A stretch of 37,610 nt of DNA from Macrostomum lignano. Taxonomy: Eukaryota. This document shows, piece by piece, positions 18,057 through 23,364 of this stretch. A program made the position numbers and the translations under genes. The stretch covers positions 1-37,610 of the forward strand of contig NIVC01003447.1 in NCBI GenBank assembly GCA_002269645.1, written 5' to 3'. Under the pieces are notes generated by a model. It worked only from the letters and a program-made list of their open reading frames with translations. It was not told where the DNA came from and did not search any database. The number at the start of each line of letters is the position of its first letter. Within the stretch, counting starts at the first letter, position 1.

Positions 18057-20483
18057 ATGGAGCCAGAATTAAGAGCTGCACTAGAGGCAAAAGACGATGA
18101 AAAACTGCAGCAACTCTGCCCGCTTATCGACTCCAATATGGAGTTGACGGTCGGTGGCTACAAGTATTTCTTCAACGAAGAGCGAACTCAGCCCGTGACG
18201 CATCACGTCGTCTGCAAGACGCGAAGTTCGCAGTGCCTGAAACTTCTGATTGACAAGTTCGGACCCGAGTTCGTGACCTGCAGAAACGACAGGGATGAGA
18301 CCGTTGTGCATCTTATAGCTCAGCATCAGGACGACTCCTGGATGGAACTGATTCCAGAACCTATTGTCCAGCAAAGCCTTAAAGTGACAGCATGGAAGGG
18401 CAGAACAGTGACTCACTATGCTGCTATGAACGATGTAAGCGACTCAGTATTAAAACTACTTGTAGACAAGTGCGGAGTCGACTGTCTCAAAAGCTTGGAC
18501 AATGACGGCAACACGGCCCTCCATCTTGCTGCGCAGTATCAGGGTAGCGATTCGATGAAGCTAGCTAAAACAGTACTGGGTACTGACTGCTTCCAAAGTA
18601 GAGGTTTCTCGAATCGGACTGTGATTCACTATGCAGCTTCCAACACCAGTAGTCACACTTCACTAAAATGGCTTGTCGTACTGTGCGGAACCGACTGTCT
18701 TAAAGCTTCTGATAAAGACGGATACACTGCCGTCCATCTCGCTGCACAGTACCAGGGCATTAAGTCAATGGAGCTGATGAAGGACGCGCTTGGAACTGCC
18801 TGTTTCTATCCAAGCAAAAGCTCCCAAGAGAAAACGGTGTTTCATTGTGCAGCTTCAAACAGATCCAGCAATGCATCATTGAAAGTGGCTTGTTCAAGAA
18901 TTCGGATCTGACTGTCTAACCAAATTTTCCGACAAATTCGGAAACATGCCCCTCCATTTTGTTGCAGAGTGGCAGGGTGCAGATTCGATGGAGCTGATGA
19001 AGAAGGAGCTTGGAAGCAGCTGTTTTCAACTCCAAGGCAAGTCACATAAAACATCGATACACTATGCCGCTGCTAACCGAGAAAGCAACGAATCGCTAAA
19101 ATGGCTTCTCAATGAGTACGGACCCGAAAGTCTCAAAGTTCCGGACAAAGATGGAAACACGGCGGTCCATCTTGCTGCCCAAAATCAGGGCGTCGACTCA
19201 ATGGAACTGATGAAGACAAAGCTCGGAGACGCCTGTTTCGAAATAAAAGGCAAACTACGCTGGACTCCTGTTCACTTTGCAGCTACCAACCTTAGTAGCA
19301 ATGCGTCACTAAAGTGGCTCGTCAAAGAATTGGGATCAGACTGTCTTGAATTGCCTGACAAGGACGGAAACACTGCCATACATCTCGCAGCTCGGTACCA
19401 GGGCATCGATTCGATGAAACTGATGAAGGAAGCGCTCGGAAAGGACTGCTTTCTGTTGAAAGGCTGCTTGAACAGAACTGCAATTCACTGTGCAGCTACC
19501 AATGAAAGCAGCAACCAATCGCTAAAGTGGCTCGTAAGAGAATGCGGAGCTGAAAGTCTCACAGTTCCCGATCAAAATGGACACACGGCTGTCCATCTTG
19601 CCTCACAGTATCAAGGCACAGACTCCATAGAACTGATAAAGCAAGAGCTCGGTACGGAGTGCTTTTTACTAGAAGAAAGTTTGTTTGCTAGAACGCCAGT
19701 TCATTGTGCTGCTTTAAACAGAGTCAGTAACGCATCCTTAAAATGGCTAGTCAAAGAGTTCGGATGTGGGTGTCTTAAAACTCCCGATAAAGACGGAGAC
19801 ACGCCTATCCATCTTGCCACACAGTGTCAAAGCATTGATTCACTGGAACTGATGAAAATAGAGCTCGGAATCAACTGTTTTCAGCTGAAAGGCTACTCAA
19901 ATAGAATGCCAATTCATATTGCCGCTTCAAGCAGCGAGAAATTAGCATTGTTTAATTGGCTGATAAAAGAGTGTGGACCCGATTGTCTGAAGGTTCCTGA
20001 GAAAAACGGAAACACGGCTGTGCATCTTGCAGCTCAGTATCAGGGCATCGAGTCGATGAAACTGATAAAGAAAGAGCTAGGAACTGGTTGCTTCCATTTG
20101 AAGGGCAGATTGATGCGGACCCCCGTTCATTGCGCCGCTTGTAACAAATTTGGCTACTCAGTGCTCAAGTGGCTTGTCCTGAAGTGCGGTCCCGACTGTG
20201 TGGCTGCTGTCGACAAAGACGGAAACACGATCGTTCATCTCGCTGCAGAGCACCAGTCAGCTGACTTGTTGCAGTTTCTAATTGATCAAATTGGACCTCA
20301 AGTACTCTCTCTGAAGAACAACAAAGGAGAAACACTAGTAGAATGTGTGGAGAAGGACTCGGATAATGATCGTAAAGCAAGAAAGCGAAACTGGATCGAA
20401 CTTACAAAGGATTTTGAGTCTTTTTATCTCGAGGAGGGAGCTGTTTCTGTGAATGCAGAAGCTACGGATGATTTGTTAAACCA
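18057..20483 (+). CDS. Ankyrin-repeat/kinase gene, exon 1: ~20 ankyrin repeats in alternating A/B pairs of ~71 aa
   Basis: ORFs 18039-18911 and 18946-20487 join by removing one base at 18882-18885 (TTG AAA G TGG gives SLKWLVQEFGSDC). Repeated DKDGNTAVHLAAQ and RTPVHCAA motifs. Ends at donor CA|GTAAGT (20484). Confidence 0.9.
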
Positions 20484-20836
20484 GTAAGTTTCAGGCTCTT
20501 TACAATTTGAGTTGCGGTTTAAATTACCTGCTGCGTATGTAGCTCGTACTGAAGTATTTTAATTTGATGTTTAAGAAAAGCTTTAAAAATGTCTGTGACT
20601 GTGAAGAGCTTGTACTCGTAATTATATAATTCCAATGCTCCAACGAATATAGCCTACCCTATAAAATATAAAAACCATAATTTTTAATGAATGCAATGAA
20701 TGGTAAAAGTCAAGGGATGAAGCAATTTAATTTGATGCTTATCTGCTAATAGCTTATTTTTGTAGTTATCTGTAAAAAATGTGTGTACCAAAGTGTTGCA
20801 ATATAAAGTATACAAACAAACTGATTCAATTTTCAG

Positions 20837-22078
20837 ACTGCGTACAGCTTTGGAAGCCCGTGACGATGCGCTTCTGCGGCGACTCTGCCTGCTTCTTAAC
20901 TCTAACGTTGAACTAACGGTCAATGATTGTCTCAACAAGGAACGAACTCAGTCTGTGACTCATCACGTCGTCTGTAAGTCGCGAAGTTTGCAGTGCCTGA
21001 AGCTTCTGATATCCAAATTCGGACCCGACTGTCTGTTAAACAGAAACAATCGAGGTGAAACCGCGGTGCATTTGACTGCTATGCACCAGGAAAACCTGTG
21101 GATGAAACTAATTCTAGAAGCTCTTGGCCGTGACTGCTTCAAGGACACAGCATCTAACGGTCGAATGGTGACTCACTATGCTGCTACGAATGAGACAAGT
21201 AACTCATCGCTAAAGTGGCTTGTTGCCGAGTTTGGACGCGACTGTCTCTTAGTACCCGATAAAGAAGGAAGCACAGTCGTTCATCTTGCCGCAGAGTATC
21301 AAGGTGTCGACTCCATGGAACTGATGAACAGAGAGCTCGAAACCGACTGCTTCAAAGAGTTAAAAGGATCCCAGAATCGAACGGTAGTTCACTATGCCGC
21401 CGGAAACAATATTAGCGATGCACCGCTTCGTTGGCTGGTGAAAAAGTTTGGACCAAGCTGTATCAAATTTCCAGATAAACATGGTGTCACGCCTATCCAT
21501 CTAGTTACATTAAACTCCAGAAGCACGAGTAGTATGACGCTTAATTGGCTAGTTTCTGTCGGCGGCCCGGACTGTCTCACTATTCCTGACAATGAGGGAA
21601 ACACACCTGTCCATCTCGCTGCAGAGTTTCACAACATCGAATCCATGAAATTCATAAAGAAAATACTCGGACCAGAATGCTTTAGAAGAATTGGTTTTTG
21701 GCAAAGAACACCCATTCACTGCGCTGCCGCAAACAGTAACTGCAGTGCCCTGCTTGGATGGCTCATAAAAGAATGCGGACACGACTGTCTGATGTGTCAG
21801 GACAAAGACGGAAACACGCCTGTCCATCGCGCTGCATGCTTTCAGCCAGTTAAATCATTGAAGTTGCTGGCTGACCAAATCGGGCCCGAAATTTTCTCGC
21901 TTAAGAACGCTTCTGGAAAAACAATAGCCGATTTTGTAAACCAGGACTTAGATGAAGACCGAAAACTACAAAAGCAGAGTTGGATCTCGAGCCAACTGAC
22001 GCCAGAGAGACAACTAAACCTGAGGCATCCGGAAGTCAGAATGACGGCATCGGTAGAATCCTTGGGTGGCTCAAGTGG
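20837..22078 (+). CDS. Ankyrin-repeat/kinase gene, exon 2: ~9 ankyrin repeats, paralogous to exon 1
   Basis: Acceptor AATTTTCAG| at 20836 is phase 2 and in frame with exon 1 (LLN-Q-LRTALEARDD). The N-terminal cap matches exon 1 (LRAALEAKDD...ERTQPVTHHVVCK). Ends at donor GG|GTAAGC (22079). Confidence 0.88.
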
Positions 22079-22372
22079 GTAAGCAACTGCAGCATATTTG
22101 TAGCATATTAGAAATCTATTACCGATCATCTTTGGGGAGCAGCTCGCGGTAAACGTGTCTGAGTCTTGGGGTTGTCCAACAATTCATTCCCATATAGTCC
22201 GACCCCTTTGAGGCACAGAGAGTGTACGTGCCTGACCATTCGAGATGGTACATCCTGTGTGATGTTTGTTATGTTTTGTTATGACTTGCATGTACTGCAT
22301 CCTGTGACTAGCCATCAAGTTCCCCACTGCATTTAAAACTGTGTCCATTCATTTCACTCTGGAAACAAGCAG

Positions 22373-23364
22373 CAGAGCTGGCGGAAAACCATTTCGCGAG
22401 AAATGGGAAAATAAGCAGCTCCTCGGCAGGGGCGGTTTCGGCGACGTCCACAAAGTGCTCACCGACACGGGCGTCACGTGCGCTGCCAAAACTCTCAGAC
22501 TGCCATTGCAGCTCGGAGATCAACTGGACTCTAAGGCTAGAAAGGTTGACTCAGTTGTTGAGAGCGAGAAAAACCTGTGCCAACTGCAGCATCCCAACAT
22601 CGTCAGGTTCTTGTACATCACTCAGCCGGAGCCTGCAACAGTTGTTGTCTTTATGGAGCTGCTGGACGGCCACACTTTAGAGAATTTCATCGACGAGAAG
22701 CCGATAGATGAAGAGAAAATTCGACACTTTAGCAAGCAAGTGAGTTCACTTGAATTTGTCTCGAGTGCACTTCTGAAATATAGTACATATACTTACTTCA
22801 GTTGGAAAGCAGAAGTCCTGAAGTTCTCTCAGAATTTCACTGACCAACCGCTCTTAGATCTGCAGCGCGCTGCTCTACCTGCACAGCCAGCAGCCGCCCG
22901 TGATCCACAGAGACATCAACTGCACCAACATAATTGTCCTTGCCGACGGAACTGATCGACTTAAGCTGATCGACTTCGGCCTGTCAATCAAGCTGGAGCA
23001 GTCAGTCAGCCACATCTCAGCCTCCACTTCGCCAAAGGGCACTCTAAACTTCATGGCGCCAGAGCTGCTCGGAGATGGTGAGTCGGAAAGCGTGCAGTAC
23101 AGCAGAGAGTCGGACATCTGGGCGTTCGGCTGCTCGGTCTACCAGATGGCCATCGGAGCGAGGCCCTTTGCCACCGCCAAGAACTTGCTTCAATTGGTTC
23201 GCCTGCTAGACCAAAACGGAGCCCCGCTACTGCAGACGGGGCAGCAGAGCTGCTCACAAGAGCTGCTAGATTTCTATTCCCTGTGCACCGCTAAAGATCG
23301 CAAAGCCAGAATATCGGCAGAGGCACTGATGAAGCACAAATTTTTGACTCGTTCCTGTGACTAA
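22373..23364 (+). CDS. Ankyrin-repeat/kinase gene, exons 3-4: STE/MAP3K-like Ser/Thr protein kinase domain
   Basis: GRGGFG, CAAK, alphaC Glu, HPNIV, HRDINCTN, DFG, GTLNFMAPE, SDIWAFGC. Intron 22740-22857 (CAA|GTGAGT ... CTTAG|ATC) links KIRHFSKQ to ICSALLYLH in phase 0. The entry acceptor is one of three in-frame AGs at 22369/22372/22375. Confidence 0.92.

What the first reader, a model, noticed from the sequence alone, without database searches (positions are those of the whole stretch)
18057..23364. Five ORFs are one ~1,510-aa ankyrin-ankyrin-kinase protein built from duplicated whole-exon modules
Canonical in-phase splice sites link all parts: CA|GTAAGT 20484 to TTTCAG|A 20836 (phase 2), GG|GTAAGC 22079 to CAG|C ~22372 (phase 2) and 22740-22857 (phase 0). 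The summed exon length after removing the extra base is 4,542 nt, an exact number of codons. Each ankyrin exon starts with the same capping module (LRxALEAxDD...ERTQxVTHHVVCK) and carries ~20 or ~9 repeats. Inference: a modular receptor-kinase whose sensor arrays change by exon duplication and repeat-number variation, typical of rapidly evolving innate-immune sensors.
Basis: partly seen in the sequence, partly recalled or inferred. Interest (0 to 1): 0.7.

Follow-up and report, generated by a model that had tools for sequence, protein, structure and literature searches.

The report
Flatworm double-ankyrin protein kinase gene

Summary
Exons 18057-20483, 20837-22078, 22373-22739 and 22858-23364 sum to 4,543 nt. 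Removing one extra G (18885, absent from two other ~99% identical copies) gives 4,542 nt, which is 1,513 codons plus the stop. The organism is the flatworm Macrostomum lignano. An RNA-seq-based public model (BOX15_Mlig014711g3) contains all three proposed junctions residue for residue. All six splice sites are identical in three genomic copies. The protein has a cap plus 20 ankyrin repeats, then a cap plus 9 repeats, a disordered linker, and a kinase domain of the STE/WNK-like type. It has no signal peptide or membrane segment. The single-exon ankyrin module and both kinase introns recur in paralogues. One of these, Mlig002601, also chains ankyrin modules through a phase-2 intron beside the cap. 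All kinase relatives at 36% identity or more are M. lignano proteins, and some are fused to a caspase domain. "Duplicated whole-exon modules" is therefore supported. "Receptor" and "rapidly evolving innate-immune sensor" are not: the two modules are an old duplication (62-66% nt identity), and variants among copies give dN/dS of about 0.3. Whether the frameshift is an assembly error or a real lesion in this copy cannot be decided here. The gene is a new, uncharacterised member of a known kind, of modest interest.

The parts
18020..18026 (+). Candidate 3' splice acceptor (TTTTTAG, the 3' part of a six-T run before AG) 30 nt upstream of the start codon. It could serve a 5'UTR exon or spliced-leader trans-splicing.
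   Evidence: Sequence. The ML2 model P0310 starts KKNYLDQPTAMEPELR, i.e. at 18027. The M. lignano spliced leader ends in ATG (PMC8629364), and that ATG would be in frame here. Untested.
18057..20483 (+). Exon 1. It holds the start codon, the N-terminal cap (18069-18218), 20 ankyrin repeats in alternating A (36 aa) and B (35 aa) types, a C-terminal half-repeat, and an acidic tail ending DDLLN-Q.
   Evidence: ORFs; Pfam Ank_2 6e-67; repeat parsing. P0004 (Mlig014711g4) starts at the same Met and reads through the frameshift site.
18885..18885 (+). One extra G that splits exon 1 into two ORFs (a frameshift).
   Evidence: Absent from L001 and L003. Removing it restores ...NASLKWLVQEFGSDC..., as in P0002 and P0004. 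The ML2 model P0310 skips the matching 139-nt stretch 18837-18975, whose length is 1 mod 3. This suggests another contig carries a +1 shift in that interval.
20484..20836 (+). Intron 1, 353 nt, phase 2 (GTAAGT...TTTTCAG).
   Evidence: Junction LLNQ|LRTALE in the RNA-based model P0001. Sites are identical in three copies. No similarity to other introns or flanks.
20837..22078 (+). Exon 2, 1,242 nt, a symmetric phase 2-2 exon. It holds the second cap (20838-20978), 9 ankyrin repeats including a hybrid B-head/A-tail repeat (21486-21554), a C-terminal half-repeat, and the start of the linker.
   Evidence: Pfam Ank_2 5.8e-28; repeat parsing. Its 5' part is colinear with the exon 1 5' part (66% nt) and its 3' part with the exon 1 3' part (62% nt). 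The AlphaFold model has pLDDT of about 90 for residues 1-388. There is no in-frame ATG before Met-83 of the module.
22079..22372 (+). Intron 2, 294 nt, phase 2 (GTAAGC...AAGCAG).
   Evidence: Junction GGSSG|RAGGKPF in P0001. A phase-2 intron at the same position in paralogues L002 and L004.
22373..22739 (+). Exon 3: linker end and kinase N-lobe. Motifs: G-loop GRGGFG 22425-22442; beta-3 Lys within CAAKTL 22479-22496; alpha-C Glu within VESEKN 22557-22574.
   Evidence: Pfam Pkinase 9.1e-52 for exons 3+4; motif coordinates.
22740..22857 (+). Intron 3, 118 nt, phase 0 (GTGAGT...CTCTTAG).
   Evidence: Junction FSKQ|ICSALLY in P0001. A phase-0 intron at the same place in L002 and twice in L004.
22858..23364 (+). 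Exon 4: kinase C-lobe and stop codon. Motifs: HRDINCTN 22906-22929; DFG 22972-22980; APE 23056-23064; TAA 23362-23364.
   Evidence: PDB sequence matches (WNK1/3, NEK7, PLK4, MAP3K2, MST3, PAK). Fold matches (ASK1, STK10, TNIK, WNK3).

Best explanation
Window 18057-23364 (+) is one four-exon protein-coding gene of the flatworm Macrostomum lignano. It is a further genomic copy of transcript cluster Mlig014711.

Shown:
- It encodes a 1,513-residue soluble protein.
- The order of parts is: N-cap plus 20 ankyrin repeats (exon 1), a short acidic tail, a second N-cap plus 9 ankyrin repeats (exon 2), a disordered linker of about 40 residues, and a C-terminal eukaryotic Ser/Thr-type kinase domain (exons 3-4).
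- In this copy exon 1 carries one extra G at 18885.
- The gene belongs to a large M. lignano-specific family. In that family a one-exon ankyrin module (cap, alternating A/B repeats, tail, phase-2 donor) is joined to a two-exon kinase module.

Inferred origin: this gene has two ankyrin modules because an upstream module's phase-2 donor now splices to an acceptor created at the very start of a second module, which has lost its own ATG. Either a tandem duplication or a fusion of neighbouring paralogues could produce this, and it happened long ago.

Inferred mechanism, not shown: the two ankyrin solenoids are cytoplasmic protein-binding scaffolds. They would recruit partners or substrates to the flexibly tethered kinase, or regulate it, as in other ankyrin-repeat kinases. 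The kinase keeps the G-loop, beta-3 Lys, HRD, DFG and APE motifs. It replaces the catalytic-loop Lys with Asn, so activity is likely but unproven.
For: - Reading frame arithmetic and translation.
- Pfam: Ank_2 6e-67 and 5.8e-28; Pkinase 9.1e-52.
- P0001 (BOX15_Mlig014711g3) is 99% identical and contains all three junctions. P0004 (g4) gives the exon 1 N-terminus and reads through position 18885.
- BOX15 models derive from StringTie/TACO assemblies of RNA-seq, with TransDecoder ORFs (PMC5730564).
- Donors fit the M. lignano consensus GT[G/A]AG. Two of the three acceptors are CAG (PMC8629364).
- All six splice sites, the ATG and the stop are identical in three genomic copies. Each copy has its own private 1-nt indels.
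- Exon 2 has no in-frame ATG before Met-83. A spliced-leader ATG joined at 20836 would be out of frame and would meet a stop after 9 codons.
- Intron positions and phases are conserved in paralogue Mlig029208. Chained modules occur in Mlig002601.
- 14 synonymous and 14 nonsynonymous variants among the copies.
- No membrane-spanning or signal segment.
- The AlphaFold model shows a confident solenoid, a disordered linker (residues 389-424, pLDDT below 50) and a kinase fold. Fold matches are to STE-group and WNK kinases.
Against: - No reads were examined here. The transcript evidence is second-hand, through annotated models on two other copies, and both models are truncated by indels.
- The window copy has a frameshift that may be real. 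ML2 model P0310 bypasses the same 139-nt interval.
- The TAA at 20485-87 lies directly after the exon 1 donor. Intron retention would therefore give an ANK-only product, and ANK-only family members are annotated (P0007, P0009, P0011).
- The acceptor of intron 2 (AAGCAG) has no obvious pyrimidine tract.
- The catalytic-loop Lys-to-Asn change leaves kinase activity uncertain.
- Function and binding partners are entirely inferred.
Confidence: 0.85

Rival explanations
1. This copy is a pseudogene. The extra G at 18885 would be a real mutation in one of several near-identical copies of the locus in the hidden-polyploid M. lignano genome. The window would then encode only a 285-residue ANK fragment from the ATG at 18057 (the listed ORF is 290 aa from an upstream TTG), while intact copies elsewhere do the work.
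For: - The frameshift is in the sequence.
- ML2 model P0310 differs from the window elsewhere. It still skips 18837-18975, a 139-nt stretch of length 1 mod 3, which keeps frame only if that contig also has a +1 shift there.
- Several ~99% identical copies exist, so redundancy could tolerate loss of one.
Against: - It is the only lesion in 4.5 kb; there are no stops and all splice sites are intact.
- L001 has 5 private 1-nt indels and L003 has 6. L003's deletions fall exactly at sites where the copies differ, which is a consensus-calling artefact. Single-base indels are therefore common errors in these assemblies.
- Variants among copies give dN/dS of about 0.3, not about 1.
Confidence: 0.4
2. 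There are two or three independent genes: an ANK-only gene ending at the 20485 TAA, and a separate ANK2-kinase gene matured by spliced-leader trans-splicing at 20836. The fused models would then be unprocessed polycistronic precursors.
For: - M. lignano has many operons and precursor-like assembled transcripts (PMC5730564).
- TTTCAG fits the trans-splice acceptor motif [T/C]TNCAG.
- A stop codon lies directly at the donor.
- ANK-only proteins are annotated in the family.
Against: - P0001's ORF crosses the junction with intron 1 removed, which a precursor would not show.
- Exon 2 lacks a start codon for 82 codons, and the spliced leader's ATG would be out of frame.
- The donor GTAAGT and the phase match are conserved in three copies.
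- The same module-to-module phase-2 splice occurs in paralogue Mlig002601.
Confidence: 0.08
3. One reading: a modular innate-immune sensor kinase whose ankyrin arrays diversify quickly by exon duplication and repeat gain or loss to track ligands.
For: - The family is lineage-specific and large, with variable repeat numbers. Some arrays expanded recently: P0003 has near-identical double repeats.
- Exons are modular and phase-compatible.
- Paralogous kinases are fused to caspase domains. One such protein is noted in the literature as sister to flatworm ANK-caspases (PMC11463336).
Against: - There is no membrane or secretion signal.
- The two modules of this gene are old (62-66% nt identity), and its repeats are 32-65% identical, so turnover is not recent.
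- B-type repeats keep the residues at canonical binding-face positions (DKDGNT..HLAAQYQG) largely conserved between repeats.
- dN/dS is about 0.3 among copies.
- No immune expression data were found.
Confidence: 0.1

Closest known systems
M. lignano paralogues Mlig029208 (P0003, ANK-kinase) and Mlig002601 (P0309, ANK-ANK(-ANK)-pseudokinase-kinase)
   Same: - Same cap motif and the same alternating A/B double ankyrin repeat.
- Same one-exon ANK module ending in a phase-2 donor.
- Same phase-2 intron before the kinase and same phase-0 intron at S(K/E)Q|IC.
- Same PPVIHRDINC(S/T)N catalytic loop.
- Kinase about 70% identical for P0006 and P0121-P0124; P0003 is 53% over the whole query.

   Different: - Mlig029208 has one module with 3 near-identical, recently duplicated double repeats.
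- Mlig002601 adds a degenerate pseudokinase, and its last ANK module is fused in one exon with the pseudokinase N-lobe.
- The window gene has 20 + 9 old, diverged repeats.
Integrin-linked kinase (ILK) and TNNI3K (N-terminal ankyrin repeats followed by a kinase or pseudokinase domain)
   Same: Same domain order (ANK then kinase). Both are cytoplasmic. The ankyrin repeats serve as protein-docking modules (established knowledge).
   Different: - Those proteins have 5 and 10 repeats in a single array and TKL-type kinase domains (from memory).
- Neither appears among the 60 best PDB sequence matches or the 50 best fold matches of this kinase, which are STE-group and WNK.
- They have no double array.
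RIPK4/ANKK1 and DAPK1 (kinase followed by ankyrin repeats)
   Same: They combine a Ser/Thr kinase with an ankyrin array and act in signalling or cell-death contexts (established knowledge).
   Different: The domain order is the opposite. No specific sequence relationship was detected.
WNK kinases
   Same: Best PDB sequence matches are WNK1 at 3.4e-25 and WNK3. The region LH(S/T)xxPP(V/I)IHRD(I/L)xCxNI is strikingly similar. WNK3 is also among the top fold matches.
   Different: - The defining WNK trait is absent. This protein has the normal beta-3 Lys (CAAK) and Gly, not Lys, in the G-loop (GRGGFG).
- Scores for NEK7, PLK4, MAP3K2, MST3 and PAK are nearly equal.
STE-group kinases (ASK1/MAP3K5, STK10/SLK, TNIK, MAP4K4, PAK1, MEKK2)
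   Same: Top fold matches, with TM-score 0.68-0.79 on the target and 24-30% identity. The activation segment is of the GT(L/P)xFMAPE type.
   Different: No orthology. Identity is 30% or less. The catalytic loop is HRDINCTN rather than HRDIKxxN.
[quoted passage not shown]
   Same: P0145 (Mlig018903) and P0136 combine ANK, a kinase and a Peptidase_C14 caspase domain. The P0145 kinase is 40% identical to this one over the whole domain and shares HRDIN, the (K/T)QICSAL motif and PKGTL.
   Different: The window gene has no caspase domain. The ankyrin repeats of P0145 are of a different, generic type with no cap motif.

Membership tests
Ankyrin-repeat proteins | Tandem repeats of about 33 residues with a TPLH-like motif, forming helix-turn-helix plus hairpin stacks | tested here: met
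   Pfam Ank_2 6e-67 (exon 1) and 5.8e-28 (exon 2). 20 + 9 repeats with the xTxxHxAA motif. AlphaFold solenoid with pLDDT of about 90.
Eukaryotic protein kinase (ePK) domain | G-loop GxGxxG, beta-3 Lys, alpha-C Glu, HRD, DFG and APE | tested here: met
   Pkinase 9.1e-52 covering profile positions 2-263 of 263. GRGGFG, CAAK, VESEK, HRD, DFG and APE are all present.
Eukaryotic protein kinase (ePK) domain | Catalytic-loop Lys of Ser/Thr kinases (HRDxKxxN) | tested here: not met
   The loop is HRDINCTN, with Asn in place of Lys. It aligns to the K of WNK HRDLKCDN. The same Asn is found in P0003, P0309 and P0145. The sister subfamily keeps HRDIKCSN.
WNK kinases | No Lys in beta-3; the catalytic Lys is relocated to the G-loop (beta-2) | tested here: not met
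   The beta-3 Lys is present (CAAKTL). The G-loop is GRGGFGDV, without Lys.
STE-group kinases | Phylogenetic placement within STE7/11/20 clades | tested here: inconclusive
   Best fold matches are ASK1, STK10, TNIK, MAP4K4 and PAK1, but WNK3 scores equally. Sequence scores for WNK, NEK, PLK, MAP3K and STE20 lie within 10 bits of each other. No kinome-wide tree was built.
ILK / TNNI3K-type ankyrin kinases | N-terminal ANK array followed by a TKL-group (pseudo)kinase orthologous to ILK or TNNI3K | tested here: not met
   The domain order matches, but neither protein is among the best 60 PDB sequence hits or the best 50 fold hits. All relatives at 36% identity or more are M. lignano proteins.
   The N-terminus MEPELRAALEAKDDEK is acidic. 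The maximum 19-residue Kyte-Doolittle mean is 1.13. The linker is hydrophilic and disordered.
   14 synonymous and 14 nonsynonymous variants among 3 copies, dN/dS of about 0.3, from small numbers. The modules are 62-66% nt identical and the repeats 32-65% aa identical, so both are old. No between-species data were available.
M. lignano cap-ANK(A/B)-kinase family | Cap motif; alternating A (..LKWLV..G.DCL..PDKDG) and B (NTAVHLAA.YQG.DSMEL.K..LG..CF) repeats; phase-2 ANK|kinase intron; phase-0 intron at SxQ|IC; PPVIHRDINC | tested here: met

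The most novel reading that the evidence does not exclude
The HRDIN-type kinases of M. lignano are joined in different genes to one, two or three cap-ANK exon modules, to pseudokinases, or to caspase domains. Together they could form a flatworm-specific cytosolic surveillance or cell-death signalling system. In it, swappable ankyrin-solenoid exons would act as ligand-recognition arrays, and phase-2 symmetric exons would allow new sensor combinations, including in-frame skipping of exon 2.
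Probability: 0.1. Interest if true: 0.65.

Novelty: new member of a known kind. Interest (0 to 1): 0.3.

Why it matters
- Public annotation holds this gene only as truncated or patched hypothetical proteins: 915, 740, 1,167 and 1,359 aa. Every assembled copy has single-base indels. The full 1,513-aa architecture given here is the corrected model.
- It documents a large Macrostomum-specific kinase family built from phase-compatible exon modules. This is a clean example of domain-array evolution by module chaining.
- It links that family to the recently noted kinase-caspase of M. lignano. This gives flatworm cell-death and signalling researchers candidate genes in a transgenesis-capable model.
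- Beyond that it is an ordinary lineage-specific gene.

Tried and rejected
- Tandem Repeats Finder did not report the 207-nt ankyrin period, because the units are too diverged.
- A sensitive blastn between the two modules and their flanks found homology only in coding sequence. There was no relic of kinase exons in intron 1 and no shared intron or upstream sequence, so the duplication mechanism cannot be read from the DNA.
- Rfam and tRNA scans of the whole window found nothing.
- tblastn of the model found no other family fragment in the window.
- Literature searches for the gene ID found nothing. Searches for Macrostomum plus ankyrin plus kinase found only the caspase paper and generic mentions.
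- I considered a WNK assignment because of the best PDB hits and rejected it on the defining lysine positions.
- I considered horizontal origin from bacteria, because the word-indexed search listed metagenomic kinases next. The exhaustive search shows ordinary eukaryotic kinases at the same low identity, so I did not pursue it.
- One Pfam call failed on a size limit and was repeated.
- The L001 and L003 models turned out to be truncated by assembly indels rather than by biology.

Full report
**What is in the sequence.** Five + strand ORFs lie between 18039 and 23364.
- Intron 1 is 20484-20836: CA|GTAAGT ... TTTTCAG|A, phase 2, junction codon CAA.
- Intron 2 is 22079-22372: GG|GTAAGC ... AAGCAG|C, phase 2, junction codon GGC.
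- Intron 3 is 22740-22857: CAA|GTGAGT ... CTCTTAG|A, phase 0.

ORF 1 and ORF 2 are the same exon split by a +1 frameshift. The four exons total 4,543 nt. Without one base they give 4,542 nt, which is 1,513 codons plus TAA, with no internal stop. Pfam finds ankyrin repeats in exon 1 (Ank_2 6e-67) and exon 2 (5.8e-28). It finds a complete protein kinase domain in exons 3+4 (9.1e-52, profile positions 2-263 of 263).

Frame-keeping GT/AG pairs are frequent by chance in the three gaps, with 11, 19 and 69 alternatives.

- P0001 (BOX15_Mlig014711g3, 915 aa) is 99% identical to exons 2-4. It extends back into exon 1 and contains all three junctions as predicted...ATDDLLNQ|LRTALEARDD......SLGGSSG|RAGGKPFREKW......RHFSKQ|ICSALLYLH....
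- P0004 (Mlig014711g4, 740 aa) starts at the same Met as 18057 and reads straight through the frameshift site.
- The BOX15 models come from the Mlig_3_7 annotation. That annotation is built from RNA-seq (StringTie/TACO plus a de novo transcriptome), cut at experimentally mapped trans-splice and poly(A) sites, with ORFs called by TransDecoder (PMC5730564). The junctions therefore rest on transcripts, though I saw them only through the annotation.
- The three donors fit the species consensus GT[G/A]AG. Two of the three acceptors are CAG (PMC8629364).

**The frameshift.** Two Mlig_3_7 contigs carry ~98.8% identical copies of the locus: L001 (NIVC01004735) and L003 (NIVC01000894).
- In a three-way alignment the window has a single private insertion in the coding sequence, the G at 18885 (AAA[G]TGG).
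- L001 has five private 1-nt indels in exon 1.
- L003 has six private 1-nt deletions in the exons (plus one in intron 3). All sit exactly at positions where the window and L001 differ, which is the signature of consensus calling over collapsed near-identical copies.
- These indels explain why the public models are truncated: g3 starts at an internal Met after L001's last indel, and g4 ends at L003's first.
- All six splice sites, the ATG and the stop are identical in the three copies.
- Codon variants among the copies are 14 synonymous and 14 nonsynonymous, giving dN/dS of roughly 0.3.

This points to an assembly error, but not conclusively. An ab initio model from the older ML2 assembly (P0310) differs from the window elsewhere. 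It bypasses exactly the interval 18837-18975, which is 139 nt, a length of 1 mod 3. That skip keeps frame only if its contig also has a +1 shift there. I put the chance that this copy is really frameshifted at about 0.4. Either way, intact copies of the gene exist.

**Anatomy of the protein.**
- Exon 1 encodes a cap (LRAALEAKDD...ERTQPVTHHVVCK, 18069-18218), 20 TPLH-type repeats, a C-terminal half-repeat and an acidic tail.
- Exon 2 encodes the same cap (LRTALEARDD...ERTQSVTHHVVCK, 20838-20978), 9 repeats, a half-repeat and a tail.
- The repeats alternate between an A type (36 aa, RTxxHxAAxNxxSNxSLKWLVxExGxDCLxxPDKDG) and a B type (35 aa, NTAVHLAAQYQGxDSMELMKxxLGxxCFxLKGxxx). This double unit of about 71 residues is shared by the whole family.
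- At the DNA level the 5' part of exon 2 is colinear with the 5' part of exon 1 (66% identity), and its 3' part with the 3' part of exon 1 (62%). Exon 1 has about five extra double units in the middle.
- No similarity extends into introns or flanks.
- Double units within the gene are 32-65% identical, so both the duplication and the expansion are old.
- One repeat of exon 2 (21486-21554) has a B-type head and an A-type tail. I read this as the scar of an out-of-register deletion (inference).
- An AlphaFold model of exon 2 plus the kinase gives a confident solenoid (residues 1-388, pLDDT about 90), with the cap as a helix pair plus a beta-hairpin. The linker is disordered (389-424, pLDDT below 50) and is followed by a kinase fold (pTM 0.54, consistent with independently placed domains, though I did not inspect the interdomain error).
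- There is no signal peptide or membrane-spanning stretch; the highest 19-residue hydropathy is 1.13. This is a soluble, presumably cytoplasmic protein, not a receptor in the membrane sense.

**The kinase.**
- GRGGFG, the beta-3 Lys (CAAK), the alpha-C Glu, HRD, DFG and APE are all present. The catalytic-loop Lys is replaced by Asn (HRDINCTN).
- The best solved-structure sequence matches are WNK1/WNK3 (3.4e-25), with a strikingly similar LHxxxPPxIHRDxxCxNI stretch. NEK7, PLK4, MAP3K2, MST3 and PAK score within a few bits.
- Fold matches are led by ASK1, STK10, TNIK, WNK3 and PAK1.
- It is not a WNK, because it has the ordinary beta-3 Lys and no G-loop Lys.
- I classify it as an unassigned STE/WNK-like ePK.

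**The family.**
- An exhaustive HMMER search of 1.84 billion representatives found 275 proteins at E up to 1e-30. Every hit that I looked up with 36% identity or more to the kinase is from M. lignano.
- With the second word-indexed search, at least 25 transcript clusters belong to it.
- Architectures include ANK-kinase, ANK-kinase-kinase, ANK-only models, ANK-kinase-caspase and kinase-ANK-caspase (P0145, P0136).
- The kinase of P0145 is 40% identical over the full domain and shares the Asn (HRDINGNN).

**Are the modules exons?** Yes.
- Paralogue Mlig029208 (P0003, locus L002) has three exons: one exon from ATG through cap, repeats and tail ending GG|GTGAGT (phase 2); a kinase N-lobe exon; and, after a phase-0 intron at SEQ|ICRALLYL, a C-lobe exon. 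These are the same positions and phases as in the window.
- Paralogue Mlig002601 (P0309, locus L004; RNA-based, partial) has the following structure:
  - a first module as a separate upstream ORF;
  - a second module exon with its own ATG (MESTLRKALEARDD);
  - a phase-2 intron whose acceptor lies 5 codons before the third cap;
  - a third module fused with a degenerate pseudokinase N-lobe;
  - the phase-0 intron, then the pseudokinase C-lobe;
  - a phase-2 intron, and then the active kinase with its phase-0 intron.
- Chaining of ankyrin modules through phase-2 introns beside the cap is therefore recurrent.
- In the window gene exon 2 is a symmetric 2-2 exon (1,242 nt) without a start codon for 82 codons. 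The M. lignano spliced leader ends in ATG, and joined at 20836 it would be out of frame. This argues against an independent ANK2-kinase gene.
- Skipping exon 2 would be in frame. That is a testable prediction.

**How it most likely works.** The domain order, the flexible tether, the soluble nature and the intact catalytic motifs (except one) are shown. From established knowledge of ankyrin-repeat kinases and ankyrin scaffolds, I infer that the two solenoids bind protein partners and bring them to, or regulate, the tethered kinase. Which partners, which pathway, and whether the Asn-containing catalytic loop is active are all unknown.

**Verdict.**
- The gene-model and whole-exon-module interpretation is supported.
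- The 'receptor' and 'rapidly evolving innate-immune sensor' labels are not supported.
- The gene is already in public databases as fragmented hypothetical proteins, and no paper I found describes this ANK-kinase family beyond the kinase-caspase note.
- It is a new, uncharacterised member of the known kind 'ankyrin-repeat protein kinase', in a lineage-specific expansion. Interest is modest (0.3).

Noticed in passing
window 10456-15290 (+): A 1,064-aa ORF has a signal-peptide-like start and a MACPF/perforin domain (3e-13). It is followed, in another frame overlapping by 34 nt (13617-13650), by a 557-aa ORF with 17 Ephrin_rec_like cysteine-rich repeats (5.5e-73). This is probably one secreted MACPF protein split by an indel or a short intron. 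I did not read through the break.
   Followed up: partly
window 16014-16343 (+): A 109-aa ORF contains ...IVIYTRADCCKERARNLQI.... From memory this resembles fucolectin/FTP-type lectin domains, and it may be a further exon of the upstream secreted protein. Pfam found nothing at E<0.001.
   Followed up: partly
window 1825-2256 and 4527-5036 (-): Two exons of a calpain-family cysteine protease (Peptidase_C2, 4.5e-14 and 2.2e-09), separated by minisatellite-rich introns.
   Followed up: partly
window 27719-28279 and 36290-36811 (+): Two closely similar first exons of ELO-family fatty-acid elongases (4.4e-36 and 6.7e-33), i.e. a tandem gene duplicate. L001 carries the first one in the same order after the kinase gene.
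   Followed up: partly
window 23786-24477, 24928-25989, 26430-27017, 30739-31426, 31799-33298 and others: The window is dense in long minisatellites with periods of 15-29 nt and up to 67 copies. They create long spurious ORFs on both strands.
   Followed up: no
window 18020-18056 (+): The acceptor-like site TTTTTAG|AAG (preceded by a sixth T) lies 30 nt before the start codon. The M. lignano spliced leader ends in ATG and would be in frame here (MKKNYLDQPTAMEPELR). ML2 model P0310 begins exactly KKNYLDQPTAMEPELR.
   Followed up: partly
window 22906-22929 (+); also P0003, P0309, P0145: The catalytic loop is HRDINCTN. The near-invariant Lys of Ser/Thr kinases is Asn throughout this subfamily, including the kinase-caspase proteins. 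A sister M. lignano subfamily keeps HRDIKCSN.
   Followed up: partly
L003 9851-15453 versus window 17900-23500: All seven of L003's private 1-nt deletions (six in exons, one in intron 3) fall exactly at sites where the window and L001 differ by a substitution. This is an assembly or polishing artefact of collapsed near-identical copies in Mlig_3_7, and it breaks gene models.
   Followed up: yes
P0121, P0005 (M. lignano ML2 models); L004 7591-9698: The kinase module also occurs in tandem: kinase-kinase(-kinase) models, and a pseudokinase-kinase pair in Mlig002601 with the phase-0 intron kept in both copies.
   Followed up: partly
P0145 (Mlig018903), P0136: M. lignano proteins combine ankyrin repeats, this kinase type and a caspase (Peptidase_C14) domain in one chain. 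These match the 'kinase pro-domain caspase' mentioned in PMC11463336.
   Followed up: partly
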